Virus record (IMG/VR): IMGVR_UViG_3300028394_002328
Location: 186,001-250,000 of that record
Direction: 5' to 3' (one strand)
Length of the DNA stretch: 64,000 nt
Shown: piece by piece, positions 3,878 through 17,770 of the stretch
Layout: the number at the start of each line of letters is the position of its first letter
Numbering within the stretch: the first letter of the stretch is position 1
Made by a program: the position numbers and the translations under genes
Notes under the pieces: generated by a model
What the model was told of the DNA's origin: nothing
Seen by the model: the letters and a program-made list of their open reading frames with translations, nothing else
Database searches by the model: none

Positions 3878-4567
3878 ATGAAAACTTTGGTAGTAATTTC
3901 GGGTGGTTTCCATCCTTTTCATGCAGGACATATGGCATTGTATAACACTGCCAAAAAAACATTTCCTGATGCCGATGTAGTAGTCGGTGCTACTAATGTA
4001 CAAAAAGATAGACCATTTCCTTTTAAGGTTAAACAGAAATTAGCACAAGTATCAGGTGTTCCTCCTAAAAACTTTGTAGAAGTTACAAGACAGTTTTCAT
4101 CACAAGATCCTGAGATTGCTAAAAGAATCGGTGATCCTGAAGATACTATATTAATTTTTGTTCGTAGTGAAAAAGATAAAAACGAAGCACCTTTACCGTG
4201 GAGTTTAAATCCTGATGGTTCAGTGCCTGTTGGTAAAAGAACAGGTAAGCCATTAAGCAACTACTTACTACCTTATAAAGGAAATGAAAACAATTTAGAA
4301 CCATTGACTAAACATGCTTATATGGCATATTTACCTACAGTAGAGTTTGGACCTGGTATTACTAGTGCTACAGAGATTCGTAATGCATGGCCCACATTAA
4401 ATGATAAGCGTAAAACCGCAATGGTTATGAGTCTTTATCCTGCAACACAAAAGAATCCTGCATTAGCAGCCAATGTTGTTGCTATGTTAGATCAGGTTAT
4501 GGGTGCTGCTGATACTGCTGACACACTAAATGAAGATATAAATCAAGATTATTTAGAAGAAAAATAA
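3878..4567 (+). CDS. cytidylyltransferase-like (HIGH-motif) nucleotidyltransferase
   Basis: VVISGGFHPFHAGH (HxGH) N-terminal motif and TSATEIR (SxT/S-type) motif. Confidence 0.75.
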   Translation: MKTLVVISGGFHPFHAGHMALYNTAKKTFPDADVVVGATNVQKDRPFPFKVKQKLAQVSGVPPKNFVEVTRQFSSQDPEIAKRIGDPEDTILIFVRSEKDKNEAPLPWSLNPDGSVPVGKRTGKPLSNYLLPYKGNENNLEPLTKHAYMAYLPTVEFGPGITSATEIRNAWPTLNDKRKTAMVMSLYPATQKNPALAANVVAMLDQVMGAADTADTLNEDINQDYLEEK

Positions 4568-4617
4568 TTTGACAGTATCCTCGTACAGTAAATAACTGTA
4601 TCATTTATGAGGATCAC

Positions 4618-5520
4618 ATGTCAGAAGAAAAAACAGTCCCTGTAGAAGAACTACAGGAAATTGCCGAGCAGGCACAACAAGAACAAACATCAGAAGAGAA
4701 GCCAGCAGAGCAAGCTCCACAAGCCGGTCAGGTTCAAGTTAATGTAGACTTCTTGCGTACTACAAGAGTTCATATTTCAATGCCATGCTATGGTGGTATG
4801 CTTACTGAATCTACATTTATGAGTTTCATTAAGTGGGCTAATACTGCTAGACAACTTGGCATTGATTGGACATTGGAAACAATGGTCAATGAAAGTCTTA
4901 TCAGCCGTGCAAGAAACACATTGACTGCTAAGTTTCTAGATATGCCTGATGCTACACATTTATTCTTTGTTGACGCAGATATTGGTTGGGAACCATGGCA
5001 TCTACTAGTATTGCTTAACCGTGATAAAGATGTTATTGGTGGATTGTATCCAATGAAAACTATGCCCATCAAATGGGTAGTTAATGGATTTGAAGGTGCT
5101 GAAGAAGGACCCGATGGATTACAAGAAGTTAGTAAAGCAGGTACAGGATTCTTGTTAATGAAGAAACATGTATTTGAAAAGTTAAAAACTCATCCAGCAG
5201 TTAAACAATACAAGAATGATATTGGACTTGATCCAAAATATGATCAGCACTTGAAAACTTATTTTGATACAGCGGTTCGTCAAAATCGTTATTATTCTGA
5301 GGATTGGACCTTCTGCGAAAATTGGCGTGATTTAGGTGGAAAGATTTGGGTAGACAAGCGTGTATTACTACGCCATAGTGGTAGTTATGTTTTCTGTATG
5401 GAAAATCAAGAACACTTACTTAAGACTGTTGGACCAATGTTCTTAGAACAACAAATGGCAACAGGATTAAAACTAATTGACAAAGACGGTAAAGAAGTTA
5501 CATCAATTAAGCCAGCATAA
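4618..5520 (+). CDS. GT-A fold (GT2-like) glycosyltransferase
   Basis: ISMPCY, ESLISRARN, LFFVDADI (DxD), GTGFLLMK, SEDWTFC, LRHSG motifs. Confidence 0.75.
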   Translation: MSEEKTVPVEELQEIAEQAQQEQTSEEKPAEQAPQAGQVQVNVDFLRTTRVHISMPCYGGMLTESTFMSFIKWANTARQLGIDWTLETMVNESLISRARNTLTAKFLDMPDATHLFFVDADIGWEPWHLLVLLNRDKDVIGGLYPMKTMPIKWVVNGFEGAEEGPDGLQEVSKAGTGFLLMKKHVFEKLKTHPAVKQYKNDIGLDPKYDQHLKTYFDTAVRQNRYYSEDWTFCENWRDLGGKIWVDKRVLLRHSGSYVFCMENQEHLLKTVGPMFLEQQMATGLKLIDKDGKEVTSIKPA

Positions 5521-5571: not shown

Positions 5572-6564
5572 ATGGACATTAAAACACTAGAATCATTTAA
5601 GTTATCGGATGCAGTAACATTCCATAACCAATTAAATCCTAAATTATTTGTAGGTCAAAAATTACTACCACAGGTAAAAAAGCAATTATTATTAATCGCA
5701 AAGGATTTCACTGATAATTTAGGTATACAAAACTTAAACATTAAAGATATTACTGTATCAGGATCCAACGCAGCATATAGTTATACACCACATAGTGATT
5801 TAGATTTACATATTATAGTAGATATGAGTAATATGAACAATGATGATGTATACCGTGAGTTGTTTAATGCCAAGAAAACTATTTACAATGATTCACATAA
5901 CATTACTGTACATGGTATTCCTGTAGAGTTATATGTACAAGATGAAGCCGAACCTGTAAAAAGTTTAGGTGAGTATAGTTTATTACAAGATAAATGGTTA
6001 AGATATCCCACTAAGCGCAGAGCAAACTTAGACCAAAACGCAACTAAAGCCAAATTTGACAAATTAGAAAAATTAATTCATTTAGCATTAAGATCAAAAA
6101 ACTTAAAAAAAATATTAGAAGTATTAAAGACTATCAAGCGATATAGACAAGCAGGGTTAGAGAAAGGTGGTGAATTTGGTCCTGAGAATTTAGCGTTTAA
6201 AGCATTGCGTAGTCAGGGGCTAATTACTAAACTATACGCATTAAGGGATCGGTTACATAGTGAAAAGTTAACGATTGAAACTATGTATCAGGATATAGAT
6301 GAAGATTCTCCAATGCAATTTGCTGCTGAAAAGACACCACCAATAAATCCATATGGTGGACTAAAAGATAGACAGTATCGCGGGGGAATATCAGAAGCAA
6401 GTGGGTATATTCCAAGTGAAAAAGAGAAAAATGATCCTCGGTGGAAAACCGGATTAACGGTGGATGTGAAACCTAATTCTATTAAAAAGAATGCCAAAGC
6501 ATTTGGGTTTAATACTAGTAGAGCGGGTATTCCACCTACATTAAAACCTTCAGGTGAAATATGA
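5572..6564 (+). CDS. DNA polymerase beta-superfamily nucleotidyltransferase domain protein
   Basis: VSGSNAAYSYTPHSDLDLHII = GS...DxD motif, with a third acidic residue in VELYVQD; preceded by late motif at 5559. Confidence 0.7.
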   Translation: MDIKTLESFKLSDAVTFHNQLNPKLFVGQKLLPQVKKQLLLIAKDFTDNLGIQNLNIKDITVSGSNAAYSYTPHSDLDLHIIVDMSNMNNDDVYRELFNAKKTIYNDSHNITVHGIPVELYVQDEAEPVKSLGEYSLLQDKWLRYPTKRRANLDQNATKAKFDKLEKLIHLALRSKNLKKILEVLKTIKRYRQAGLEKGGEFGPENLAFKALRSQGLITKLYALRDRLHSEKLTIETMYQDIDEDSPMQFAAEKTPPINPYGGLKDRQYRGGISEASGYIPSEKEKNDPRWKTGLTVDVKPNSIKKNAKAFGFNTSRAGIPPTLKPSGEI

Positions 6565-6770
6565 CAGTAACATTCTCAGGTGGAGTTAGAATAGCAGGTG
6601 GAACCACATTCTCTCCTCCCGTATCTTCATTGCCAATTAAAAGTGTTATCTTTTCGGATATGGAAGTAATCTCAACATCGTTATTAATGCTAAATACAAG
6701 ATTAACAACTACATTGAGTATTACACCGGCAAAAAGTTATGCTCAATCAATATTATTCGGGAGCGATTAA
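6561..6770 (+). CDS. hypothetical protein
   Basis: 69 aa ORF with ATGA overlap; N-terminus (MTVTFSGGVRIAGG) resembles the starts of the fibre-like genes at 13124 and 14581. Confidence 0.5.
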   Translation: MTVTFSGGVRIAGGTTFSPPVSSLPIKSVIFSDMEVISTSLLMLNTRLTTTLSITPAKSYAQSILFGSD

Positions 6771-7142
6771 ATGGCCAATCCAAATATTCTAGCGGCAACA
6801 ACTATAACAGGGAATACCACCTATTTGATTCCCGCTAATACAAGTGTCAATACATGGACCGCATTGACACCATCAGCAAATACTGTACATAAAATTGAAA
6901 ATATAACTGTTTCAAATGTTACTGGTAATGCAGTACCAATAACTCTTTCAATTAATAGTGCTATTAGTGGTGGTGGTACAGCGTATAGAATAGCATATCA
7001 AATTAGTGTACCATCAAATGCGTCATTGATTCTAACAGATAAAACTACATCATTTTATGTAACAGAAACTCAGAGTGTGGTAGCCACAGTAGGAACAGCC
7101 AGCGCACTGGAATTAGTAGCAAGTTACGAAGCTATAACCTAA
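6771..7142 (+). CDS. putative virion/fibre-associated protein (MANPNI... type)
   Basis: 123 aa Thr/Ser-rich beta-type ORF heading the glycine-rich array. Confidence 0.65.
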   Translation: MANPNILAATTITGNTTYLIPANTSVNTWTALTPSANTVHKIENITVSNVTGNAVPITLSINSAISGGGTAYRIAYQISVPSNASLILTDKTTSFYVTETQSVVATVGTASALELVASYEAIT

Positions 7143-7149
7143 TCTAACA

Positions 7150-8013
7150 ATGTCACAGCGTTATACTGGCGGAATACTTTCAGCAGCATTAACTGGTTTG
7201 AATTCGCCAGTTACCACTGTTGAGTATTTGGTTGTCGCTGGTGGTGGCGGGGGTGGACGTGAAACTAATACTTCGGGTGTCGGTGGCGGTGGTGGTGCGG
7301 GTGGTTTACTAACTGCAACAGGGTTTTCTATAACAGTTGGAACTTCTTACACCGTTACGATTGGTGCTGGCGGTGCAGGGCTAAATACTTCGACAGGTGC
7401 AGTTGGAAACAACGGCTCTAATTCTGTTTTTGGTTCTATTACCGCAATTGCTGGTGGTGGCGGTGGAGGAACGACTTTACAAGCGGGTAATACTGGCGGT
7501 TCAGGTGGTGGTGGATCAATTTTTGGCGGTGGAGGTGCGGCTGGAACGGCTGGACAAGGTAATGCTGGCGGAACACACAACACAACTTATAACTCTGCTG
7601 GTGGTGGTGGTGGCGCAGGTTCAGTAGGCGGTAATGCTGGCGCTTATGGTGGTGGCTCTGGTGGGACAGGATTAAGTTCATCCATATCTGGCACACAAGT
7701 TCAGTACGCTGGCGGCGGCGGCGGCGCTACTACTTTAACAAACGCTTCTTTGGGTGGTGGTGGCGGGGGTGGTAATGGTGCGCTCTACTCAGCATCATCG
7801 TTCGGTGGTGGTGGTTTAGCCAATACAGGTGGTGGTGGCGGTGGGGGTTCAAATGGCCCTGCACCATCAGGCTCAGGAGGCTCTGGCATAGTCATCATCC
7901 GTTACCCATCATATCTAGCCTCGGCAACATCAACGACTGGAAGCCCACAAACATACATAGATGGCAGTTGGCGAGTGTATGTATGGGTAAGTAGTGGTAC
8001 AATAACTTTTTAA
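7150..8013 (+). CDS. glycine-rich domain protein, putative fibre/adhesin subunit
   Basis: VEYLVVAGGGGG ... GGSGIVIIRYP ... SSGTITF architecture. Confidence 0.75.
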   Translation: MSQRYTGGILSAALTGLNSPVTTVEYLVVAGGGGGGRETNTSGVGGGGGAGGLLTATGFSITVGTSYTVTIGAGGAGLNTSTGAVGNNGSNSVFGSITAIAGGGGGGTTLQAGNTGGSGGGGSIFGGGGAAGTAGQGNAGGTHNTTYNSAGGGGGAGSVGGNAGAYGGGSGGTGLSSSISGTQVQYAGGGGGATTLTNASLGGGGGGGNGALYSASSFGGGGLANTGGGGGGGSNGPAPSGSGGSGIVIIRYPSYLASATSTTGSPQTYIDGSWRVYVWVSSGTITF

Positions 8014-8023
8014 GAATATAACA

Positions 8024-10084
8024 ATGGCACAAGGATTATTCACTCTCAGACAGCAAGTACAGGGCATAGTTCAAAAGGCTTGGATTGCGCCCGCAGGCAC
8101 TTCTGCTGGTGTGTTCAATGGTACTAGCCAGTATTTGACTGTTCCTTATAGTTCAGCGTTTAACTTTGGGACTGGTGATTTTACTATTGAGGGCTGGATT
8201 AACCTAAGTTCTTTAAGTGTAAATTACTATGTTCTTGCTGGAACTTGGACTACTGGAACTTCAGACGAGTGGCTAATACAAATTCAAAACAATAATACTA
8301 TTAGATTTTTAACAACCGCTGGAACAAGTTTTTATTCGGCTACTATAACAACTGGAGTGTGGTATCATATTGCAGGTGTTAGAAGCGGGTCAACAATAAC
8401 ACTGTATGTGAATGGTGCAAGCGTTGGCAGTTATACTAATGCAAATAGTATAGGATCGGTTAGCAAGACTGTTTACATTGGTGCACAAGAAACAGCAATT
8501 TGGTATGTGAATGGTTACATTAGTAACTTCCGTATCGTAAAAGGTACCGCACTTTATACGTCTAATTTTGCAATTCCATCAGCCCCACTGAGAAATATAA
8601 CAGGCACTTCGTTACTAACTCTACAAAACGCTACAATTGTTGATAATAGTAGTAACGCATCCACAATTACAAACGTTGGGTCTGCGACCACTTCAACTAT
8701 ATCGCCAACGGCAATCCCAGTTAATGGACTCTCGCCCCCAGCAGTAGACTACCTTGTAGTTGCTGGTGGTGGAGGTGCGTCACAAGGTGGCGGTGGTGCA
8801 GGAGGATTACTTCAAGGATCTATACCAGTTACGACTGGTTCTGCTCTCACAGTAACAGTTGGTGGTGGTGGCGGTGCTTATACACAAGGACAAAATTCAG
8901 TTTTTTCAAGCATCGTAGCCATTGGCGGCGGGGCAGCGGCTAGTGGTACAGGTGGCTCTGGAGGTGGCGGGAATAATTCAACAGGACAACAGGGTACGTT
9001 CGGTCAAGGCAATACTGGTGGAGCAGGTAGCGCAACAGCAAGTCCGTATGCTGGTGGGGGTGGAGGAGGTGCTGGAACAGTTGGATTAAACGCAATTTCA
9101 ACAGTCGCGGGAAATGGTGGTGCAGGAATTGCGTCTGCTATTTCTGGAACTATTACAACTTATGCTGGTGGAGGTGGAGGAGGTGGGCCGACTAATGGTA
9201 CAGGTGGTGTAGGTGGAGGTGGCAATGGTGATGCAGATGGTACAGTAAACAGAGGAGGAGGTGGCGGCGGCGGATACGCAGGAGGTCCAAAATCAGGTGG
9301 CTCCGGTATTGTCATCCTAAGTTACCCTGATATATACGCTGGAGCAGCCGCAACTACTGGTAGCCCAACAGTCAGCACCAGCGGGTCGGGGAGTTTATTG
9401 CCGGGAAGCACATCAAGTTGGATCTACTACGCGGCTCAATCCGGGTTTGCTTTTGGCACTGGTGATTTTACGATTGAGTTTTGGACTAATTTTTATAGTA
9501 CGACCAGCGGCGCTAGTGGAACGAGTTATCTTTTAGATTTCCGTGGCGCTAGTAATCCGGCTAATTCTTCACTTGGTATTTTTCAAAACAGCGGTGGACT
9601 GCAATTATTTACGCAATCAGGACTTAATCCTAATTACGGAACGCCATCAATTAACACTTGGTTAAACATAGCGGTATCTAGGGTTAGCGGAACATTGTAT
9701 TGGTTTGTAAACGGAAGTCTTGTTAGTTCCGGAGCAGACACCACTAATTACACCGTTGGCTCAACTGGCCCGTCTTTTATGGGGTCGAGTTATTATAACA
9801 ACTACGGCTTGCAAGGTTACATGAGTAATATTCGTGTAATAAAAGGCACTGGATTATACACCTCTAATTATACTGCAACCACAACGCCTTATACTGCTGT
9901 TACAAATACGCAATTGCTTTTGAATACGGTTTCCGGCGGTTATTTAGCAGATGGGTCTACAAACTCTTACGCCGCATCAGTAGCAGGAACTGTGGCATGG
10001 AATCAACTCTCACCATTCGCAACTGGTTTAGGATACAAGAACCGTGTGTACACATACACGGGTAGCGGTTCAATAACCTTCTAA
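8024..10084 (+). CDS. glycine-rich protein with two LamG/concanavalin A-like lectin domains
   Basis: Two FGTGDFTIE.W ... WxHIA/WLNIA ... YISNFRIVKG/YMSNIRVIKG units around one VDYLVVAGGGG domain. Confidence 0.78.
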   Translation: MAQGLFTLRQQVQGIVQKAWIAPAGTSAGVFNGTSQYLTVPYSSAFNFGTGDFTIEGWINLSSLSVNYYVLAGTWTTGTSDEWLIQIQNNNTIRFLTTAGTSFYSATITTGVWYHIAGVRSGSTITLYVNGASVGSYTNANSIGSVSKTVYIGAQETAIWYVNGYISNFRIVKGTALYTSNFAIPSAPLRNITGTSLLTLQNATIVDNSSNASTITNVGSATTSTISPTAIPVNGLSPPAVDYLVVAGGGGASQGGGGAGGLLQGSIPVTTGSALTVTVGGGGGAYTQGQNSVFSSIVAIGGGAAASGTGGSGGGGNNSTGQQGTFGQGNTGGAGSATASPYAGGGGGGAGTVGLNAISTVAGNGGAGIASAISGTITTYAGGGGGGGPTNGTGGVGGGGNGDADGTVNRGGGGGGGYAGGPKSGGSGIVILSYPDIYAGAAATTGSPTVSTSGSGSLLPGSTSSWIYYAAQSGFAFGTGDFTIEFWTNFYSTTSGASGTSYLLDFRGASNPANSSLGIFQNSGGLQLFTQSGLNPNYGTPSINTWLNIAVSRVSGTLYWFVNGSLVSSGADTTNYTVGSTGPSFMGSSYYNNYGLQGYMSNIRVIKGTGLYTSNYTATTTPYTAVTNTQLLLNTVSGGYLADGSTNSYAASVAGTVAWNQLSPFATGLGYKNRVYTYTGSGSITF

Positions 10085-10094
10085 GGATAATATT

Positions 10095-11015
10095 ATGAGT
10101 CAAACTTTATTAGGAGGTTTTCTAAGCGCAACATTTAATCCCATGACGGATCAAAAGACTAGCACGGTGGAATACCTTGTTGTTGCTGGTGGCGGTGGGG
10201 CACAAACTGGTGGTGGAGGTGCTGGTGGATTATTAACTGCGGCTGGTTTTGCTGTTGCGGCAGGTTCTGCGTTAACTATTACTGTTGGCAGTGGTGGACC
10301 GTCAGCGACAAATGGGAGCAATTCGGTATTTAGTTCAATTACTGCAATTGGCGGTGGTGCTGGTGGTGCTCAAGAGTCTAATGGAAGTTCTGGCGGTTCT
10401 GGAGGCGGTGGTGGGCAATGGTATAGTGTTGCCGGGCCTTATACTGGAGGTGCTGGAACATCAGGACAAGGATTTGCTGGTGGGACAGGCAATCCAGCAG
10501 CATACAATCCTAATACTCAAGCCTTTGGTGGTGGCGGGGGAGGTGGTGCTGGTTCTGTTGGGGGAAGTATTGTTGCTGGTGTTTATTGCAAAGGTAATGG
10601 CGGTGCTGGAATATGTTCATCTATAACAGGTACTTCTATATTCTACGCAGGTGGTGGCGGGGGTAGATCGTATATTGGTAATGTTGGTGATCCTTGGGGC
10701 GGTGGTAATGGTGGTGCAGGAGGCGGTGGCGGTTCTAGCACAAATGGCGCAGGACTTGGTGGTATTACAAGATCAACCAACAATGGGCAAGATAGCGTAG
10801 CTAGTGGCAGAGGTGGTAATGGAGGGGCAAACTCAGGCGGCGGAGGTGGAGGGGCAAACTCAGGAACTAACGGGTCTGGCGGTTCCGGCATAGTCATCAT
10901 TCGTTATCCAAGAAATCTAGCACCACCTGTAAGCACAACAGGCAATCCACAAATTTTATACAACAATGGATATCAGATATATATTTGGACCAGTAGTGGT
11001 TCAATAACTTTCTAA
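10095..11015 (+). CDS. glycine-rich domain protein, paralogue of 7150..8013
   Basis: Same MSQ...GG.LSA start, VEYLVVAGGG and GIVIIRYP...SSGSITF end. Confidence 0.75.
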   Translation: MSQTLLGGFLSATFNPMTDQKTSTVEYLVVAGGGGAQTGGGGAGGLLTAAGFAVAAGSALTITVGSGGPSATNGSNSVFSSITAIGGGAGGAQESNGSSGGSGGGGGQWYSVAGPYTGGAGTSGQGFAGGTGNPAAYNPNTQAFGGGGGGGAGSVGGSIVAGVYCKGNGGAGICSSITGTSIFYAGGGGGRSYIGNVGDPWGGGNGGAGGGGGSSTNGAGLGGITRSTNNGQDSVASGRGGNGGANSGGGGGGANSGTNGSGGSGIVIIRYPRNLAPPVSTTGNPQILYNNGYQIYIWTSSGSITF

Positions 11016-11032
11016 AATAAGAGGAAAATAAA

Positions 11033-11389
11033 ATGGCACATTTTGCAAAAGTAGAAAACGGCATAGTCACTCAAGTGATTGTGATTGAGCGTGATGTTCT
11101 TGAATTAGGACATTGGGGTGATCCTAGTAGTTGGGTTCAAACCAGTTATAACACACAAGGTGGAGTACATACACAAGGTGGCACACCATTGCGTAAGAAT
11201 TACGCAGGCATCGGGTACACTTATGATAGTGAACGTGATGCTTTTATTCCACCTAAACCATATGCTAGTTGGGTATTAGATGAAGAAACATGTTTGTGGA
11301 ATCCACCTACACCTATGCCATCAGATGGTAAGATGTATACATGGGATGAAGAAACAACAAGTTGGACTGAAGTCGTAATACCAGCATAA
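11033..11389 (+). CDS. small Trp/Pro-rich phage protein, possibly fibre assembly factor
   Basis: MAHFAKV...WVQTSYN...RKNYAGIGYTYD...DAFIPPKPY.SW.LDE.TC.W.PP.P.P; strong GAGGA SD; role inferred from position among fibre-like genes. Confidence 0.65.
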   Translation: MAHFAKVENGIVTQVIVIERDVLELGHWGDPSSWVQTSYNTQGGVHTQGGTPLRKNYAGIGYTYDSERDAFIPPKPYASWVLDEETCLWNPPTPMPSDGKMYTWDEETTSWTEVVIPA

Positions 11390-11400
11390 GGATAATAGAG

Positions 11401-13116
11401 ATGCCAGCATACAGTGGAATGTGGACGCTGAGCCAAGTTGCTCAAGCAATTAGAAATAGTGATTGGACAGGTGTCCCTCCTACTGTAGTAGAGTATTTGA
11501 TTGTTGCTGGCGGTGGTGGTGCGGGAAGTCAATTAGCTGGCGGCGGTGGCGCAGGTGGATTGCTTGCTGGCTATGCAGGCATAACTTTGGGTACTTCATA
11601 CTTTGTGACCGTAGGTGCTGGTGGTACTGGTACTTCTGGGCAATCTAGTACAGGCACAAATGGAGAAAATTCTGTTTTTGACTCTACAACTTCTGGTGCT
11701 TTTACAGGGCGAATTGTTGCAACGGGTGGCGGAGTTGGTGCATCTTTAGTCGCTGTTGGCGGTATAGCACCGGGTGGAAATGGCGCATCGGGTGGTTCTG
11801 GTGGCGGTGGCGCTACGCAGTATGTTACTGGTTTGGGCGCTTCTGGCATCTCTGGACAAGGAAATGCTGGTGCAAATGGAAGTGCTTATGCTGGTGCTGG
11901 CGGTGGCGGTGGCGGTGCAGGAACCAATGGTTTAGTAGCAAATACAACTACAGGTGGCAATGGCGGTGCAGGAATAGCGTCTGCCATATCTGGAACTGTT
12001 ACTACTTATGCTGGCGGTGGTGGCGGCGGCGCTAACGCTACTGGGGGAGCAGGTGGCGTAGGAGGCGGTGGTACGGGCGGCGGGTCATCTGCCGCAGTTT
12101 ATGGAACTGCAAACACAGGCGGTGGTGCTGGTGGTGGTGCGGGGAGTGACGGTCGAGGCGGTAATGGCGGTTCAGGCATTGTAGTCATACGCTATTCAGG
12201 AGTTGTTCAATACTTTACTGGTGGAACGGTTACTTGCACAGGTGGCTATGTTATTCATACATTCACTTCTTCTGGTACACTAGCGCCAACAACTCCCGCA
12301 TACTTAGTAAACTTACCACCTAATACAGTAATTTTCTACAGTTCTGGAATATGGGTAGCACCAGCAGGTTCAACCTCAGTTGAATACTTGGTTGTAGCTG
12401 GAGGTGGAGGTGGTGGGTCTGGTGGAACAGGATCAGGTGGTGGTGGCGCAGGTGGATATCGTACCGCAACAGGACTTTCTGTTACTGCCGGTACTTCTTA
12501 TACTGTTACTGTTGGTGCTGGCGGAACAGGTGGATATGGAGCAACTACATCTCAAGCCGCAGGGGTCAGCGGAAATGATTCAATTTTTAGTTCTATAACA
12601 TCAACAGGTGGAGGTGGCGGTGGATCAGAAATATCTTCCCCAAGCATAAATTACGCTGGAAAGTCTGGTGGTTCTGGTGGTGGTCCAATTACTTCTGGAG
12701 CGGCTGGAGCAGGAAATACACCGTCAACAACACCATCTCAAGGAAACAATAGCGGAACTGCTAGTTCATCTGCCCCAAATTACGGAGGTGGTGGAGGCGG
12801 CGGTGCGGGTTCTGTTGGTGGTAATGGGTCCGAAACTGTAGGTGGTGCAGGTGGATCTGGCACAGCATCATCTTTATCAGGTACTTCAGTAACATATGCT
12901 GGTGGAGGCGGCGGCGGAACATATAACGGTGGTACAGGCGGATCGGGTGGATCAGGTGGAGGTGGTGCTGGTTCTGCTAGTGGATTAACAACTGGTAGTA
13001 ATGGTACTGCTAATTTAGGTGGGGGAGGAGGTGCCGGCGCTTATACACCAACCGGTACATATAGATCAAACGGTGGCAACGGTGGCAGCGGCATCGTAAT
13101 CATCAAGTGGAGTTAA
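11401..13116 (+). CDS. protein with two tandem glycine-rich domains
   Basis: Two VEYL.VAGGGG ... GGSGIV.I units. Confidence 0.75.
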   Translation: MPAYSGMWTLSQVAQAIRNSDWTGVPPTVVEYLIVAGGGGAGSQLAGGGGAGGLLAGYAGITLGTSYFVTVGAGGTGTSGQSSTGTNGENSVFDSTTSGAFTGRIVATGGGVGASLVAVGGIAPGGNGASGGSGGGGATQYVTGLGASGISGQGNAGANGSAYAGAGGGGGGAGTNGLVANTTTGGNGGAGIASAISGTVTTYAGGGGGGANATGGAGGVGGGGTGGGSSAAVYGTANTGGGAGGGAGSDGRGGNGGSGIVVIRYSGVVQYFTGGTVTCTGGYVIHTFTSSGTLAPTTPAYLVNLPPNTVIFYSSGIWVAPAGSTSVEYLVVAGGGGGGSGGTGSGGGGAGGYRTATGLSVTAGTSYTVTVGAGGTGGYGATTSQAAGVSGNDSIFSSITSTGGGGGGSEISSPSINYAGKSGGSGGGPITSGAAGAGNTPSTTPSQGNNSGTASSSAPNYGGGGGGGAGSVGGNGSETVGGAGGSGTASSLSGTSVTYAGGGGGGTYNGGTGGSGGSGGGGAGSASGLTTGSNGTANLGGGGGAGAYTPTGTYRSNGGNGGSGIVIIKWS

Positions 13117-13123
13117 ATATAAT

Positions 13124-14548
13124 ATGGGCATGACATTAACATCTGGACTATTAATAGGATCAGGAATAATTATTGAAGGGTTAACTGTACCTAATGCGCC
13201 CACTATTGGCACAGCAACGGCCACTGGTTCAACTACAGCAACAATATCTTTTACTGCACCTTCTTATAACGGTGGTGCATCTATCACTAGCTACACCGCA
13301 GTTAGTAGTCCAGGAAATATTACCGGTACATTAAGTCAAGCCGGTTCAGGCACTATTACTGTTACTGGACTATCCCAAAATACTAGTTATACATTTACTG
13401 TATATGCTACTAATAGAATTGGAAATAGCACAAACAGTAGCGCAAGCAATAGTATCACAACATTTACAGTACCTGGTGCACCTACTATTGGTACTGCTAC
13501 AACTACCGGTCCAACAACTGCTACAGTCACATTTACTGCACCTGCTAGTAATGGAGGTAGTACAATTACTAGTTATACAGCGGTTAGCAGCCCAGGAAAT
13601 ATTACCGGTACATTAAATCAAGCAGGTTCAGGTACAATTACAGTAAGTGGCTTAACCGCTAGTACTTCTTATACATTTACAGTGTACGCAACAAATGCCA
13701 TAGGTAATAGTGCTAATAGTAGTGCAAGTAATCAAATAACAACACAATCATCGACACCAACTTCAGTTGAATACTTGGTAGTTGCTGGTGGGGCAGGAGG
13801 TGGCGGAAATCATGGTGGTGGAGGCGGAGCCGGTGGTTATAGAACTTCAACTTTATCTGTTTCAGTATCTACCGCATATACTATAACAGTTGGCGCCGGT
13901 GGTGGGGCTAGTCAAATTGGTCAAAATTCCGTATTTTCTTCAATTACTGCTACAGGTGGGGGCTATGGAAGTACAGGTGGTGATGGATCATCTCCCCCAG
14001 CCGGAGGATCAGGTGGCGGTGGCAACGGCTACAACAATATAGTAGGTGGTGCCGGTAATACACCATCAACTTCTCCATCTCAAGGTAATAACGGCGGTAC
14101 AGGAGTTTATTATTATAACACTACTGGTGCTGGTGGTGGCGGAGCAGGTGCTGTCGGTGCAAACAGTGGTGACAATGTTGCTGGTGCAGGCGGTGCCGGT
14201 AGCGCATCATCTATTACTGGATCGTCAATTACTTATGCAGGTGGAGGTGGAGGTGGAGTTAGATTCTCTGGAACTGTTGGCGCTGGTGGTAGTGGTGGTG
14301 GAGGAGCAGGTGGAATAGAGTTTAACACTGGATCTGCTGGTACACCAAACACTGGTGGAGGTGGCGGAGGTGGCGGAGGCAATAATGGGGGCGGGGGTGC
14401 AGGTGGTTCTGGTATAGTTATTATTGCTTATCCTAATACATATACAGCGCCGGTATCAATATCTGGTGGTTTAACTTATGACCAACCCACTAGATCAGGT
14501 TATAGAGTGTATCGTTTCACACAAGGTACTGGTACTATTACTTGGTAA
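13124..14548 (+). CDS. two fibronectin type III domains plus glycine-rich domain
   Basis: Two PxAPTIGTAT...FTAP...ITSYTA...YTFTVYATN repeats, then VEYLVVAGG domain ending GTITW. Confidence 0.8.
   Translation: MGMTLTSGLLIGSGIIIEGLTVPNAPTIGTATATGSTTATISFTAPSYNGGASITSYTAVSSPGNITGTLSQAGSGTITVTGLSQNTSYTFTVYATNRIGNSTNSSASNSITTFTVPGAPTIGTATTTGPTTATVTFTAPASNGGSTITSYTAVSSPGNITGTLNQAGSGTITVSGLTASTSYTFTVYATNAIGNSANSSASNQITTQSSTPTSVEYLVVAGGAGGGGNHGGGGGAGGYRTSTLSVSVSTAYTITVGAGGGASQIGQNSVFSSITATGGGYGSTGGDGSSPPAGGSGGGGNGYNNIVGGAGNTPSTSPSQGNNGGTGVYYYNTTGAGGGGAGAVGANSGDNVAGAGGAGSASSITGSSITYAGGGGGGVRFSGTVGAGGSGGGGAGGIEFNTGSAGTPNTGGGGGGGGGNNGGGGAGGSGIVIIAYPNTYTAPVSISGGLTYDQPTRSGYRVYRFTQGTGTITW
13190..13745 (+). 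repeat. tandem duplication encoding two FN3 domains (~280 bp unit)
   Basis: Both copies share CCAGGAAATATTACCGGTACATTAA and most of the protein sequence; end points approximate. Confidence 0.8.
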
Positions 14549-14580
14549 AATAATAATCATCAGATGGAGTTAAATACAAT

Positions 14581-16575
14581 ATGCCAATAACAATTACAGG
14601 TGCAGCAGTTACAGGTGGAGCATTAATTACAGTAGCTGGCGATCCATATTTTCCATATGTTCCTTTATTATTGAACACAACAAGCACTAATACTCAAACA
14701 AATAACACTTTTTTAGATAACAGTACAAATAACTTCACGATTACTCGCAACGGAACTCCGACGCAGGGTTCTGTGACTCCGTATTGGCCTAATGGTCAGT
14801 GGAGTAATTATTTTAATGGTACCACGGATTATTTAAGCGTTCCTACTACTACTGCTTTACAGTTTGGCACAGGTGATTTTACTTTTGAATTTTGGATGTA
14901 TTTAAATTCAACCGTGAGCAATCTTGCTGAAATTTATAATACAGCCGACACTAACACTACAAATTACAGTCATTCAATAATTTGTAATTCTACAAATTTA
15001 GTGTTATATTTAAGTAGTACAGGAAGTTCTTGGAATATAGCGAGCGGCACTATTATAACTAGTAATGCTTCATTACTTAATACATGGGCCCATGTTGCTC
15101 TTGTAAGAAATGGAACGACATTTACAGTATATGTTAATGGGGTATCAAAAACTACAGTAACTTCTGCTTTGGCACTATTTTCTAACACTGGTAATATTAC
15201 TTTTGGGCATTTTCCAACTGGTTTTAATGATTACTTTCCGGGATATCTTTCAAATGTTCGTATTGTAAAAGGAACTGCAGTTTACACCGCCAACTTCACG
15301 CCACCGACAACCCCGCTTACCGCAATCACCAACACATCTCTTCTCACCTGCCAATCTAACCGTTTTATTGACAACAGTGCCAATGCTCTTGCAATCACAC
15401 TCAGCGGCACTCCCAAAGTCCAGGCATTCCAACCGTTTTCACCCTCCGCTTCGTACACCACTGCGGCGTATGGTGGAAGTGTGTATTTTAATGGGTCAAG
15501 CGATTATCTGTCGTTGACCAATTCAACGACATTAAACCCCGGAACGGGAAATTTCACACTTGAATATTGGGTGTATTTTAACGCACTAAATCAAGGAAAT
15601 ATATACGACGGGTCAATCAACGGAGTTTCTACAGCATTAAACGCATCCAGTCAATTTTCAGTTGGACAATCAAATGTAGCATATCTTTTGAATGACACTG
15701 TTGCGGCAGTTACAGGGCAATGGTATCACATTGCTATAGCAAGGTCTGGAACAACACTGTCACTATTCAAAAATGGAACAAGAGTAGCAACTGCAACAAA
15801 CTCTACTAATTTTGTTTCATCTACGGCAAATCGCATTGGCTGGAATGGAGTATCAATATATCTCAATGGATACGTCTCTAATTTGCGTTTTATTGTTGGT
15901 GGGACGCCTGTATATGACCCAACACAGACAACAATAACTGTTCCCACATCGCCAGTCAGTGCAAGTGCCACATTACTTGTCAATGGAACCAACGCAGGAA
16001 TTTACGACGCTGCGGTACAGAACAACGTGATTACAATCGGGGATGCTCAGGCCAGCACCACACAGTCTAAGTGGTCGCCAACGAGCATGAAGTTTGACGG
16101 AACCGGCGACTGGCTGACGGCTATTGACGGGCCGCAACTTCAGCTTGGTACGGGAGATTTTACAATTGACGGTTGGGTTTATTTGTCGGCAACTGGTGTT
16201 GCTTACGGGATTATTAGTAAAGGCACGGCGTCAACTGGGTGGTCTGTCAACGTCACTTCTGGCAACAAACTTCAGTTTAGCTATACCGCGTCTAACTTGA
16301 CCGGCGCTACCTCATTAGCTTCGGCTACTTGGTATTACTTTGCTGTTGTCCGGTCTGGAAGCGCAACCGAAAACTTAAAGGTCTATTTAAACGGAACGGC
16401 AGACGCTACCAGCGGCGGCGCTGTAACGGACAATTTTAATCAAACCAGCATTTTGTATGTTGGCGCAGACCGTGTTGGTGGAAGCGCACTAAACGGGTAT
16501 CTCCAAGACTTACGAATTACCAAAGGCGTTGCTCGCACTATCACAACACCAACATCAGCGTTCCCAACACAATAA
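14581..16575 (+). CDS. triple LamG/concanavalin A-like lectin domain protein (putative receptor binding)
   Basis: Three G(T/N)G(D/N)FT.E/D.W.Y ... W.H/Y.A ... SN.R/QDLR units; TAAATA motif at 14571. Confidence 0.78.
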   Translation: MPITITGAAVTGGALITVAGDPYFPYVPLLLNTTSTNTQTNNTFLDNSTNNFTITRNGTPTQGSVTPYWPNGQWSNYFNGTTDYLSVPTTTALQFGTGDFTFEFWMYLNSTVSNLAEIYNTADTNTTNYSHSIICNSTNLVLYLSSTGSSWNIASGTIITSNASLLNTWAHVALVRNGTTFTVYVNGVSKTTVTSALALFSNTGNITFGHFPTGFNDYFPGYLSNVRIVKGTAVYTANFTPPTTPLTAITNTSLLTCQSNRFIDNSANALAITLSGTPKVQAFQPFSPSASYTTAAYGGSVYFNGSSDYLSLTNSTTLNPGTGNFTLEYWVYFNALNQGNIYDGSINGVSTALNASSQFSVGQSNVAYLLNDTVAAVTGQWYHIAIARSGTTLSLFKNGTRVATATNSTNFVSSTANRIGWNGVSIYLNGYVSNLRFIVGGTPVYDPTQTTITVPTSPVSASATLLVNGTNAGIYDAAVQNNVITIGDAQASTTQSKWSPTSMKFDGTGDWLTAIDGPQLQLGTGDFTIDGWVYLSATGVAYGIISKGTASTGWSVNVTSGNKLQFSYTASNLTGATSLASATWYYFAVVRSGSATENLKVYLNGTADATSGGAVTDNFNQTSILYVGADRVGGSALNGYLQDLRITKGVARTITTPTSAFPTQ

Positions 16576-16651: not shown

Positions 16652-17770
16652 ATGAAAATTAATCAAATTATCTTAGAAACGTCTGCTGGTGCTACTGGTT
16701 CAGGATCGGTAGCCACTGTTGCTAAACCTATGGGAGAAACACAAAGTAGATACCCAGAGGTAAAAGGTCTAAAGCCAATAGATAAACTTAACGGTAAGAA
16801 AAAAGGTCCATATAGCAACTCTCTTTCAGAAAGTAAAGTAGCAGAAGCAAAACTGGAAGAAGATGATTTAATTATAGTTCCTGGACAAAGCAAAAGATTC
16901 AAGCCAGGACTAATTTCAAAAGCGGAAGATAGAACTGACCATGAAGTTGAAATGGCATTAAGTGACTTATATCAAGCATATAAGAATGCTAAAAAAACTT
17001 ATATGCTTCTAAAAAATAGAACCGAAGAAGAAGGTCTTGAAGGGTGGGTACAAGAAAAGATTATCAAGGCTAATGACTATCTAACTGCTATTCGTGAATA
17101 TTACGAACATCAGGCTATACAAAATGAAATGACTGGTGGAGTTATTGGTAATGGTATGGCAGGTGAAAGTGCTACTAAAAAAGTAAATCCATATGCTGTT
17201 GGTATGTCACAAGCAATGAAATCAACAGGTGACAAACCACCTTTGAAAAAGAGTACGATAGTCAAAGGTCATCATATAGCAAAAAAGATTAAACAACAAG
17301 ATATTGAAGAAGGTTGGAAAAGCAAACTAGCAGGCGCCGCTCTTGCTGGTGCTGCTGCTTTTGGCGGGGGCGGTGCTCATGCAGGTGGAATGTCATTGCC
17401 TCCCGCAGGATTGACACCAGCCCAAGCTCAAGAATTTACAAACGCCCAATTTGCAGGACAACAAGCAATAAATCAACATGCTGCTCAACAAGCAGGAAAA
17501 ATTGACTATCGCAAAGATGGTCCAATTACAAAAAGTTCATTAGGACATAAACTAGAATATGGTATTCCTGTAAATGCCAAAGGTGATTTTATCAATCCTA
17601 ATAGATTACCAAACATTCATGAATTGCCTAGGGACGAAATAGAAGCTATGGCTGAAGCATATCAAGCTTGGCTTAAAGACTATTTGAGTCGTTGGCCCAA
17701 TGCTAAACAACAGGCAGATGGATCAATGCAAGGTCTCAAACCAGGTCTTGCTCCGATGTACCCTAAATAA
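16652..17770 (+). CDS. modular late protein, putative internal-head polyprotein
   Basis: Late motif at 16620; MKINQIILE start; unrelated blocks separated by Glu-ending linkers (LSE, VAE, AGE, IEE). Confidence 0.6.
   Translation: MKINQIILETSAGATGSGSVATVAKPMGETQSRYPEVKGLKPIDKLNGKKKGPYSNSLSESKVAEAKLEEDDLIIVPGQSKRFKPGLISKAEDRTDHEVEMALSDLYQAYKNAKKTYMLLKNRTEEEGLEGWVQEKIIKANDYLTAIREYYEHQAIQNEMTGGVIGNGMAGESATKKVNPYAVGMSQAMKSTGDKPPLKKSTIVKGHHIAKKIKQQDIEEGWKSKLAGAALAGAAAFGGGGAHAGGMSLPPAGLTPAQAQEFTNAQFAGQQAINQHAAQQAGKIDYRKDGPITKSSLGHKLEYGIPVNAKGDFINPNRLPNIHELPRDEIEAMAEAYQAWLKDYLSRWPNAKQQADGSMQGLKPGLAPMYPK

What the first reader, a model, noticed from the sequence alone, without database searches (positions are those of the whole stretch)
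6561..16575. 10 kb combinatorial array of glycine-rich, LamG and FN3 modules built from duplicated gene types
Seen: six copies of the VEYLVVAGGGG...GSGIVII domain, five LamG domains and two FN3 domains over six genes, plus three small companion genes. Genes 7150 and 10095 share an MSQ..GG.LSA start; 8024 and 11401 share a (S/Q)G.(W/F)TL.Q...W start, so an A-B pair occurs twice. Inference: an expandable multi-receptor adhesion apparatus that diversifies by recombination among GGN-rich repeats.
Basis: partly seen in the sequence, partly recalled or inferred. Interest (0 to 1): 0.6.

Follow-up and report, generated by a model that had tools for sequence, protein, structure and literature searches.

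The report
Portable brush-domain adhesin gene cassette
A 335-kb freshwater jumbo phage carries a conserved, horizontally shared gene cassette for small glycine-rich "brush" and lectin-like proteins, probably extra host-binding parts of the virion, in a genomic site where related phages carry different cargo.

Summary
Nine co-directional genes at 6561-16575 encode six Gly_rich_2 (PF21722), five LamG and two FN3 domains, plus three small companions.

An AlphaFold model of the 287-aa protein (pLDDT 90.9) matches two phage tail proteins. These are the Pam3 tail-fibre tip gp24 (Z 13.9) and a Bxb1 tail-tip chain (Z 13.7), which I take to be the gp33 "wing brush". The domain is therefore the TNF-like plus polyglycine-II domain found on phage tails.

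The twice-occurring A-B pair is real but old. The order o123-A-B-A2-o118-B2 recurs in three large-phage contigs and in an unrelated small phage, mostly at 45-64% aa identity. The companions are far better conserved (o118 79-95%).

In relatives, the same site between two core genes holds this cassette with different add-ons, other fibre-like genes, or nothing. So the locus is expandable and variable.

Recombination among GGN repeats is not supported. The longest exact repeat is 25 nt and lies in the FN3 pair. Paralogues are 49-61% identical. The two putative footprints of rearrangement lie at gene junctions and N-terminal peptide codons.

Virion location and binding remain inferred. Read-level and complex-prediction tests could not be run.

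The parts
5572..6564 (+). up330: conserved core gene that forms the left border of the variable island. In relatives it is fused to a dCMP-deaminase domain.
   Evidence: phrog_36119. Homologues at 76-78% aa in L111/L112 lie directly upstream of the cassette. In L098/L101 the homologue lies next to the dn372 homologue.
6561..6770 (+). o69: a small gene made of a C-type N-terminal peptide (M.(I/V)TF(S/T)GG..I.GG) and a 40-aa C-terminal tail. Its stop codon abuts the o123 start.
   Evidence: 70-aa orthologues at 69-70% in L111/L112. The last 40 aa match the C-terminus of the 830-aa LamGx3-FN3 protein just upstream of o123 in L110 (43%, E 5e-7).
6771..7142 (+). o123: conserved leader gene of the cassette, a small jelly-roll protein and a candidate virion adaptor.
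   Evidence: 1324 homologues, many 70-89% identical. AF2 gives pLDDT 75, all beta. BFVD matches include proteins named virion structural protein in MaMV-DC, S-TIM5 and S-SCSM1. In most loci where it was seen, the next gene downstream is a glycine-rich or LamG gene.
7150..8013 (+). A: an 18-aa N-peptide (MSQRYTGG.LSA) followed by one Gly_rich_2 brush domain with a C-terminal beta-hairpin tail.
   Evidence: Pfam 88 bits. AF2 pLDDT 90.9. 7ypx_A Z 13.9 and 9d93_Qa Z 13.7. Groups with external 280-300-aa orthologues at SH-aLRT 99.
8024..10084 (+). B: B-type N-peptide, LamG, Gly_rich_2, then a second LamG that appears nested before the terminal hairpin of the glycine-rich domain.
   Evidence: Pfam and local HMM coordinates. 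Orthologues are GlyR-LamG only, 501-524 aa. The terminal motif ..RVYTYTGSGSITF matches the tail of A.
10095..11015 (+). A2: second standalone brush protein, from a different old subfamily than A.
   Evidence: Pfam 42 bits. Separate clade with outside members, SH-aLRT 96. Orthologues at 53-58% in L108 and L110-L112.
11033..11389 (+). o118: the best-conserved gene of the array (phrog_7759). Candidate dedicated assembly partner or chaperone of glycine-rich fibre ends.
   Evidence: 79-95% identity across loci. It directly follows a glycine-rich gene here, twice in the upstream cluster, in L063, L096, L108 and L110-L112, and in the cultured phages CRP-207 and Melnitz. No Pfam or PDB match.
11401..13116 (+). 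B2: B-type N-peptide plus two Gly_rich_2 domains. The second ends ..GIVIIKWS without the hairpin tail.
   Evidence: Pfam 161 bits, two stretches. Orthologues carry one to three domains, 278-895 aa.
13124..14548 (+). C: C-type N-peptide, two FN3 domains and one Gly_rich_2. An add-on that is not part of the conserved core.
   Evidence: Pfam. Its glycine-rich domain groups (SH-aLRT 99) with the tips of the upstream long fibres and with L096 genes. No counterpart was found in L108, L110, L111 or L112.
14549..14580 (+). Intergenic stretch that reads ..IIIIRWS-stop and looks like a relic of a glycine-rich domain end.
   Evidence: 13097-13172 and 14554-14629 are 71% identical over 76 nt (family D20). 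Sequence read.
14581..16575 (+). L3: C-type N-peptide plus three LamG domains. A mobile add-on.
   Evidence: Pfam 167 bits, three stretches. 129 related viral loci were found. The closest, at 59-71% aa, are in contigs of 48-52% GC, and three of the four inspected show tail-fibre neighbours. It lies upstream of o69 in L112 and is absent in L111.
16652..17770 (+). dn372: core gene that forms the right border of the island.
   Evidence: Homologues flank the cassette in L096, L111 and L112, and abut up330 in L098/L101.

Best explanation
The region is a conserved, horizontally shared gene cassette (o69-o123-A-B-A2-o118-B2) plus two add-on genes (C and 3xLamG). It lies in a variable island between two core genes of a Rak2/Atu_ph07-type jumbo myophage.

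I propose that it encodes accessory virion surface adhesins. Each large protein would have a short, type-specific N-terminal peptide that docks it to the particle or to a partner. Behind it come the binding modules: TNF-like/polyglycine-II brush domains, whose conserved glycine motifs form the scaffold and whose variable loops form the binding face, and LamG lectin-like domains.

o123 (a small jelly-roll) and o69 would be the conserved adaptor end. o118 would be a dedicated assembly partner of the glycine-rich ends.

Specificity appears to change in three ways:
- fast divergence of the loops;
- gain or loss of whole domains at the B and B2 positions;
- gain, loss or movement of whole genes at the ends of the cassette, by recombination at conserved gene junctions and N-peptide codons.

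What is shown: domain content, fold match, synteny, the conservation gradient and the variability of the island. What is inferred: virion location, docking by the N-peptides, the roles of o123 and o118, and ligand binding.
For: Domains.

Fold: AF2 pLDDT 90.9. Pam3 fibre 7ypx_A gives Z 13.9, 182 aa, 29% id. Bxb1 tail tip 9d93_Qa gives Z 13.7, 172 aa, 33% id. ALK GRD gives Z 5.4 and the springtail PPII antifreeze Z 4.6. In Pam3 this domain is the distal part proposed to recognise the receptor (PMC9608196). Brush domains sit on Bxb1 tail wings (PMC13243192, PMC12646305).

Same genome: glycine-rich domains terminate proteins with collagen, TIG, He_PIG and FN3 domains.

Conserved glycine motifs alternate with variable, indel-rich loops.

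Synteny: L108, L105 and L110-L112.

Conservation gradient: o118 79-95%, o123 45-81%, A/A2/B2 52-64%, B 35-54%, L3 42%.

Island: L094, L096, L097, L098 and L101.

Junction footprints.

LamG relatives are annotated as baseplate or virion structural proteins in cyanophages, and lie in the tail-fibre region of DSL-LC04.
Against: No proteomic, structural or expression data exist for this phage.

The window cluster is separated from the obvious fibre cluster by about 9 kb of non-structural genes (DnaJ, Clp-like ATPase, cytidyltransferase). It is followed by replication genes.

A and A2 lack the helical trimerisation and docking domain of Pam3 gp24.

o118 and o123 have no match that assigns a function.

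Bxb1 gp30, which carries gp33 onto the virion, is non-essential for plaque formation, and the related phage Hami1 lacks gp33. So 'accessory' may mean a weak or conditional role.

The complex prediction and the read mapping could not be run.
Confidence: 0.6

Rival explanations
1. One reading: a contingency-type locus that is now being reshuffled by homologous or slipped recombination among the GGN-rich repeats of its paralogues. This would generate new receptor combinations within populations.
For: There are many short GGN-rich direct-repeat families. Indels among orthologues cluster beside glycine runs. A separate IMG/VR assembly of the same phage breaks inside gene A, with two contigs overlapping at window 7764-7911. 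That could reflect strain heterogeneity or repeat confusion.
Against: The longest exact repeat is 25 nt and lies in the FN3 pair. Glycine-rich paralogues are 49-61% identical in protein and 60-84% over short DNA stretches. The six domains belong to different old subfamilies, each with outside orthologues. Gene order is conserved in an unrelated phage at 45-79% aa identity. GC3 of non-glycine codons matches the rest of the genome. The genome has no reverse transcriptase, so no diversity-generating retroelement.
Confidence: 0.08
2. The proteins are virion decoration, on the capsid, neck, sheath or fibre surface. They would give weak, general adhesion to polysaccharide, particles or biofilm, or would stabilise the particle. 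They would not act as specific receptor-binding proteins that decide host range.
For: o123 resembles small jelly-roll cement or decoration proteins (KHP40 cement protein, Z 9.7). In L110 the cassette follows the terminase gene and a 740-aa gene rather than tail genes. The Bxb1 wing (base gp30, which carries gp31 and gp33) is dispensable for plaque formation. FN3 and LamG domains are common in decoration proteins (established knowledge).
Against: In small phages the cassette and the 3xLamG gene lie among fibre and tailspike genes and just before the lysis genes. The same domain caps long fibres in this genome. The fast divergence of A, B, A2 and B2 against slow companions is the pattern expected of specificity determinants.
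Confidence: 0.2
3. The proteins are not virion parts. They would be made during infection and act in or on the host cell, for example by envelope remodelling, superinfection exclusion or secretion. The hydrophobic C-type N-peptides would then serve as export or membrane signals.
For: The flanking genes are non-structural. The C-type N-peptides are rich in small and hydrophobic residues. Gly_rich_2 also occurs in cellular genomes, with a control hit in Methanosarcina.
Against: The N-peptides lack a charged n-region, and A/B-type peptides are not hydrophobic. The strongest structural matches are virion proteins. The context in small phages is the tail module. o118 recurs after fibre genes in cultured phages.
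Confidence: 0.1

Closest known systems
Cyanophage Pam3 tail fibre gp24 (PDB 7YPX/7YFW) with its chaperone gp25
   Same: TNF-like beta core from which glycine-rich motifs run out as a stacked lattice. Variable residues sit at the distal ends. Best structural match: Z 13.9, 182 aa, 29% id. A small gene sits next to the fibre gene (PMC9608196).
   Different: A and A2 have no N-terminal helical shaft. They carry only about 18-20 residues, which in the A model are disordered. There are six domains in five genes instead of one fibre. o118 shows no detectable similarity to any solved chaperone. The profile-to-sequence match is only marginal (E 0.16).
Mycobacteriophage Bxb1 tail-tip chains Qa/Qb (PDB 9D93), which I take to be the gp33 'wing brush'
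   Same: A small protein (about 230 aa) that consists almost wholly of the brush domain. Z 13.7, 172 aa, 33% id. gp33 is an accessory tail part held on by other proteins (PMC12646305).
   Different: The assignment of chains Qa/Qb to gp33 is my inference from chain length and from PMC13243192, not from the entry. The host envelope and phage type differ. No homologues of the Bxb1 wing base or arm were sought or seen here. Here the brush proteins come as a fixed set of four, with two companions.
Salmonella phage S16 / T2-type gp38 adhesin (PDB 6F45)
   Same: Alternating conserved glycine-rich motifs and hypervariable segments. A small adhesin that caps a fibre, as discussed in the Pam3 paper read (PMC9608196).
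   Different: The fold match is weak (Z 3.4, rmsd 17). The lattice and the supporting domain are different. I do not file the window proteins as gp38 family members.
ALK/LTK glycine-rich domain of animals (PDB 7LRZ, 7NX3)
   Same: TNF-like module with polyglycine-II helices (Z 5.3-5.4, 113 aa).
   Different: Distant similarity only. It binds a cytokine in a receptor kinase. No functional transfer is intended.
LamG-repeat baseplate or virion proteins of T4-like cyanophages, and the multi-LamG protein of phage DSL-LC04
   Same: Repeated Laminin_G_3 modules. PHROG families are named baseplate wedge subunit or virion structural protein. Identity is 31-33% to cyanophage proteins and 44% to DSL-LC04.
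   Different: The window proteins are short (664 and 686 aa) with a lineage-specific N-peptide. They sit outside the baseplate gene cluster.
Multi-RBP jumbo myophages of the Rak2/121Q/Atu_ph07 group
   Same: The DNA polymerase is 43-50% identical to these phages. This genome encodes many fibre-like proteins, and such phages are known for many fibre genes (own knowledge).
   Different: No homology of the cassette to their described fibre proteins was tested. tblastn of A against cultured phages found nothing, probably because of the low-complexity filter.

Membership tests
Pfam Gly_rich_2 (PF21722) | Score above the gathering cut-off (24.3 bits) over most of the 226-position model | tested here: met
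   88, 54, 42, 161 (two stretches) and 71 bits, covering about positions 7-225. The whole-genome scan gives 11 places over the cut-off.
Pam3 gp24-type fibre tip (TNF-like + glycine-rich domain) | Shared fold of the TNF-like core plus glycine-rich lattice | tested here: met
   7ypx_A Z 13.9, rmsd 2.9, 182 aa, 29% id. Foldseek E 1.2e-3.
Pam3 gp24-type fibre tip (TNF-like + glycine-rich domain) | N-terminal alpha-helical bundle that trimerises the fibre and docks it to the baseplate | tested here: not met
   The model of A has no such helices. Residues 1-15 are below pLDDT 50 and the domain starts at about residue 20.
Pam3 gp24-type fibre tip (TNF-like + glycine-rich domain) | Cognate gp25-like chaperone (Tfa-like beta-sandwich plus helical trimeriser) encoded alongside | tested here: inconclusive
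   o118 is adjacent and highly conserved, but has no Pfam or PDB sequence match.
Bxb1 gp33-type brush protein | Small protein that consists of one brush domain, with the same fold | tested here: met
   9d93_Qa Z 13.7, 172 of 230 residues, 33% id. That chain Qa is gp33 is my inference.
Bxb1 gp33-type brush protein | Held on the tail by wing base and arm proteins (gp30, gp31) | not tested
   No Bxb1 gp30/gp31 sequence was at hand by reference.
S16/T2 gp38 adhesin | Three-layer polyglycine-II sandwich on a beta-helix, with an N-terminal gp37-attachment domain | tested here: not met
   6f45_D gives only Z 3.4 at rmsd 17, and 9v85_C Z 2.8.
Pfam Laminin_G_3 (PF13385) | Score above the 27.6-bit cut-off | tested here: met
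   109 bits (two stretches) in 8024 and 168 bits (three stretches) in 14581.
Diversity-generating retroelement target | A reverse transcriptase and a template repeat near the variable gene | tested here: not met
   No RVT_1 match in the 335-kb record. No long near-identical repeat in the region.
Virion structural protein / receptor-binding protein (functional class) | Presence in purified particles and binding to the host surface | not testable with these tools
   The genome is uncultured and metagenome-derived.

The most novel reading that the evidence does not exclude
The seven genes form a self-contained, portable 'plug-in' adhesin kit. It would bring its own adaptor (o69/o123), its own chaperone (o118) and four brush proteins of fixed order that assemble into one hetero-oligomeric binding organ. 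It would be able to attach to the virions of unrelated phages, from a small phage carrying recombination genes to a 335-kb jumbo myophage, and so move host-range determinants across phage families as one unit.
Probability: 0.25. Interest if true: 0.7.

Novelty: new variant of a known kind. Interest (0 to 1): 0.5.

Why it matters
Polyglycine-II "brush" domains were solved only recently on a few phage tails, and a 2026 paper still calls their distribution among phages an open problem (PMC13243795). Two points from this locus bear on that question.

- The Pfam family Gly_rich_2 is that domain, and it is very common in uncultured aquatic phages. At least 4449 relatives of one 287-aa protein were found among 8000 scored candidates.
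- The domain often comes as a fixed multi-gene cassette with two conserved small partners of unknown function.

If the cassette is a transferable host-recognition unit, three things follow:
- It would help predict host range from metagenomes.
- It would give a defined set of proteins (A, B, A2, B2, o118, o123) to express and test.
- It would offer a compact scaffold for engineering binding specificity in laboratory phages.

If the proteins turn out to be mere decoration, the finding is an ordinary example of modular phage fibre genes.

Tried and rejected
1. Megablast of the 10 kb against cultured phages, and tblastn of protein A: no match. The second is probably blinded by the low-complexity filter, so it says nothing about absence.

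2. Recent foreign origin judged from GC. The raised GC of the array (0.42-0.52 against about 0.35) disappears when glycine codons are left out. GC3 is 0.17-0.34, like the neighbouring genes. Rejected.

3. Diversity-generating retroelement: no reverse transcriptase. Rejected.

4. Recent tandem duplication of an A-B unit. The tree and the synteny show that A and A2, and B and B2, are old, separately conserved lineages. Rejected.

5. L001, L081 and L095 as 'close relatives'. They are 100% identical pieces of the same phage and carry no information on variation.

6. Function of o118 from Pfam, the PDB profile search and the protein atlas: nothing usable. Function of o123 from the atlas and PDB folds: only a generic jelly-roll plateau at Z 8-10.

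7. Promoter and terminator scan: counts at or near shuffled expectation, so no internal transcription signals can be claimed.

No other route to those data was tried.

9. The minus-strand and off-frame ORFs inside the glycine-rich genes (for example 7347-7583 and 10643-10900, proline-rich) are mirror images of GGN codons and were discarded.


Full report
**What is there.** The window is bases 186,001-250,000 of a 335,035-bp IMG/VR virus record judged about 95% complete. Its family-B DNA polymerase is 43-50% identical to those of Sinorhizobium phage Phosso, Agrobacterium phage Atu_ph07, Escherichia phage 121Q and similar jumbo myophages.

Between 6561 and 16575 lie nine genes on the + strand, separated by 0-32 bases (one pair overlaps by 4).
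- six Gly_rich_2 (PF21722) domains, in 7150, 8024, 10095, 11401 (two) and 13124;
- five Laminin_G_3 domains, two in 8024 and three in 14581;
- two fn3 domains, in 13124.

I name the genes o69, o123, A, B, A2, o118, B2, C and L3 in map order. There are in fact three kinds of short N-terminal peptide:
- A-type (MSQ..GG.LSA) in A and A2;
- B-type (G.(F/W)TL.Q..Q.I....W) in B and B2;
- C-type (M.IT.TG...(I/V).GG) in o69, C and L3.

The off-frame and minus-strand ORFs inside the glycine-rich genes are mirror images of GGN codons and are not genes.

**What the glycine-rich domain is.** An alignment of A with 27 relatives gave an AlphaFold model of pLDDT 90.9, in which only the first 15 residues are disordered.

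An exhaustive structural comparison with 48,161 PDB chains gave two matches far above the rest:
- the tail fibre of cyanophage Pam3 (7ypx_A: Z 13.9, rmsd 2.9, 182 residues, 29% identity);
- a chain of the mycobacteriophage Bxb1 tail tip (9d93_Qa: Z 13.7, 172 residues, 33% identity).

Below them come the human ALK glycine-rich domain (Z 5.4) and a springtail polyproline-II antifreeze protein (Z 4.6). The gp38 adhesin of phage S16 scores only Z 3.4. Foldseek ranks the same entries first.

In Pam3 this domain is the distal end of the single fibre. It has a TNF-like core and twelve glycine-rich motifs, whose less conserved distal ends are proposed to bind the receptor (PMC9608196). In Bxb1 the polyproline-II bundle belongs to the gp33 'tail wing brush' and to part of the spike (PMC13243192; PMC12646305). 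I take chain Qa (230 residues) to be gp33, but the entry's chain table was not available to me.

Among orthologues of A, blocks of conserved glycine motifs alternate with variable, indel-rich loops. This is the layout described for the solved adhesins.

**The wider genome.** A scan of the whole record finds about 15 glycine-rich domains in 12 genes, all in two clusters. The second cluster lies 17-32 kb upstream of the window array, at genome 161.4-176.7 kb.

In that cluster the domain is the C-terminal end of 350-900-aa proteins, most of which also carry collagen repeats, TIG, He_PIG or FN3 domains. Beside them are a 1675-aa collagen-like protein and a 965-aa protein with an endosialidase-chaperone domain. 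Two o118-like genes follow glycine-rich genes there as well.

So in this phage the domain demonstrably caps fibre-like proteins. The window cluster holds the short forms, which lack a shaft.

**The array is a conserved cassette, not a recent expansion.** The contig that encodes the best outside match of A (L108) comes from a Logan assembly. It belongs to a small phage with ERF and YqaJ recombination genes and an M15 endolysin, and has 48% GC. It carries, in the same order, o123, A, B (GlyR-LamG), A2, o118 and B2, just after collagen-like and endosialidase-chaperone fibre genes. Identities to the window proteins are 45, 57, 50, 53, 79 and 56%. A second small phage (L105) has o123-A-B at a contig end, downstream of its capsid gene.

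Three contigs of larger phages (L110 of 159 kb, L111 and L112) carry the full set. In L111, gene B appears split in the gene calls, either broken or miscalled.

A maximum-likelihood tree of 140 domains places the six window domains in different subfamilies:
- A groups with outside orthologues of 280-300 aa (support 99).
- A2 falls in another clade (support 96).
- The second domain of B2 groups with other outside sequences (support 93).
- The domain of C groups (support 99) with the tips of the upstream long fibres and with genes of L096.

The paralogues are 49-61% identical. The 'A-B pair occurs twice' is therefore an old, conserved feature of a widespread cassette.

**Conservation gradient.** Against L112, L111, L110 and L108 the identities are as follows:

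| Gene | L112 | L111 | L110 | L108 |
|---|---|---|---|---|
| o118 | 95 | 90 | 89 | 79 |
| o123 | 81 | 81 | 76 | 45 |
| o69 | 70 | 69 | - | - |
| up330 (flanking core gene) | 76 | 78 | - | - |
| A | 57 | 64 | 60 | 57 |
| A2 | 58 | 55 | 55 | 53 |
| B | 54 | 35 | 53 | 50 |
| B2 | 52 | 60 | 61 | 56 |
| L3 | 42 | - | 42 | - |

The module-bearing proteins evolve much faster than their small companions. This is what is usually seen for specificity determinants and their adaptors or chaperones.

**The locus is a variable island.** In L111 and L112 the cassette lies, as here, between homologues of up330 and dn372. Its content differs among these phages:
- B ranges from 501 aa (GlyR-LamG) to 686 aa here, with an extra N-terminal LamG. 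The split L111 gene is 1006 aa with SPRY and DUF7483 hits.
- B2 has one, two or three glycine-rich domains.
- C is found only here.
- L3 is downstream here, upstream of o69 in L112, and absent in L111.

L096 has flanking genes 80-93% identical in DNA. It carries a different set: three glycine-rich genes (two with C-type peptides), a truncated o118, then L3. DNA similarity there is only 67-77% in patches.

More distant relatives hold other cargo at the same site:
- three small genes, two with clear C-type peptides (L097);
- one such gene (L098);
- other fibre-like genes of 554, 1412 and 312 aa (L094);
- nothing (L101).

**How it changes.** The evidence does not point to the GGN repeats:
- The longest exact direct repeat in the 10 kb is 25 nt, between the two FN3 units. 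Shuffled sequence gives about 12.
- Repeat families among the glycine-rich genes are 60-84% identical over tens of bases.
- There is no reverse transcriptase in the genome.
- GC3 of non-glycine codons equals that of the neighbours, so the array is compositionally at home.

The two putative footprints lie at gene borders:
- The 32-base spacer before L3 reads as the end of a glycine-rich domain (..IIIIRWS-stop). Together with the first codons of L3, it matches the B2-end/C-start junction at 71% over 76 nt.
- In L112, the stretch that ends up330 and begins o69 is repeated in front of L3. The repeat includes 23 identical bases that code the C-type peptide.

In addition, the last 40 residues of o69 match the C-terminus of an 830-aa LamGx3-FN3 protein that precedes o123 in L110 (E 5e-7). 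This is as if o69 were the two ends of such a protein without its cargo. I infer that conserved junctions and N-peptide codons serve as the crossover sites. This is an inference from three cases.

**The companions.** o123 has 1324 detected homologues. It models as an all-beta jelly-roll (pLDDT 75). PDB matches form a plateau at Z 8-10, led by a phage cement protein. Predicted viral structures of about 105-120 aa match at TM 0.7-0.8, and several are named virion structural protein in MaMV-DC, S-TIM5 and S-SCSM1. In most loci where I saw it, a glycine-rich or LamG gene follows directly.

o118 (phrog_7759) has no Pfam, PDB or atlas assignment. It directly follows a gene that ends in a glycine-rich domain in this genome (three times), in L063, L096, L108 and L110-L112, and in Roseobacter phage CRP-207 and Methylophilales phage Melnitz. 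In DSL-LC04 it precedes a six-LamG protein. A dedicated assembly role is the simplest reading, but it is untested.

**L3.** Its relatives are numerous: 129 viral loci were found. The closest (59-71%) lie in contigs of 48-52% GC. I inspected four of these. In three, the gene lies among genes whose N-termini look like tail fibres or tailspikes, and L011 shows this less clearly. None of them carries glycine-rich neighbours. So L3 is an independently mobile module.

**Verdict.** The best explanation, at about 0.6, is a conserved and portable cassette of accessory virion adhesins in a variable receptor-binding island. Virion location, docking and ligand binding are all inferred.

The main rival (about 0.2) is that the same proteins are general decoration rather than host-range determinants. 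Active reshuffling through GGN repeats is unlikely (about 0.08), and so is a non-virion role (about 0.1).

The kind of thing is known: brush-domain adhesins, LamG tail proteins and modular fibre genes. The fixed multi-gene cassette, its two companions and its spread across unrelated phages appear not to have been described. A full-text search for the Pfam accession found no paper. I therefore rate it a new variant of a known kind, of moderate interest.

Noticed in passing
G000 genome 152,646-183,570 (outside the window; loci L103 and L104): A 31-kb cluster of long fibre-like genes. It includes a 965-aa protein with an endosialidase-chaperone domain, seven proteins that end in glycine-rich domains (most with collagen, TIG, He_PIG or FN3 domains), a 1675-aa collagen-like protein with a weak T7-tail-fibre hit, and an FN3x3-LamG protein.
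   Followed up: partly
window 7764-7911: Two other IMG/VR contigs of the same sample series (3300027754_000064 and _000065) are 100% identical to the window. They end inside gene A and overlap each other by 148 bases. This is an assembly break inside a glycine-rich gene, caused either by repeat confusion or by strain heterogeneity.
   Followed up: partly
window 14549-14580: The spacer before the 3xLamG gene reads ..IIIIRWS-stop, like the end of gene B2. It is probably a relic of a glycine-rich gene end left by a rearrangement.
   Followed up: yes
window 87-2351; genome 185,263-186,066: A Clp-type AAA+ ATPase (phrog_4871, E 1e-232) sits next to a gene with a DnaJ-like N-terminus. This chaperone pair lies between the two fibre clusters.
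   Followed up: no
genome 183,612-185,227 (L104:17612-19227): A gene with a three-TM holin match (PF11351) is followed by a gene with a eukaryotic-type carbonic anhydrase match (PF00194, E 6e-17). A carbonic anhydrase is an unusual gene for a phage.
   Followed up: no
window 17780-20290: An 836-aa protein with two GNAT acetyltransferase-like stretches and a DUF5872 region. It is conserved next to dn372 in relatives and reaches 1015-1082 aa there.
   Followed up: no
window 5572-6564, with L111:322-1800 and L112:5825-7627: The left-border gene up330 is 330 aa here. Its homologues in relatives are 492-715 aa and carry a dCMP/cytidine deaminase domain (PF00383). The domain has been gained or lost.
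   Followed up: no
window 3878-5520: A cytidyltransferase-like gene (phrog_395) and a conserved 300-aa gene (phrog_1574) lie just upstream of the island. The 300-aa gene travels with up330 in most relatives.
   Followed up: no
L097:671-2432 and L098:9411-9941: Small genes (174-237 aa) with no hit to the domain models used here occupy the island in distant relatives. Some have clear C-type N-terminal peptides and the others a looser variant. The peptide may be the lineage's common handle for whatever is placed there.
   Followed up: partly
L111:3354-6529: In this relative, gene B appears as a 38-aa fragment plus a 1006-aa ORF that starts inside a glycine-rich domain and has SPRY and DUF7483 hits. 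This is either a frameshift or assembly error, or a broken gene.
   Followed up: no
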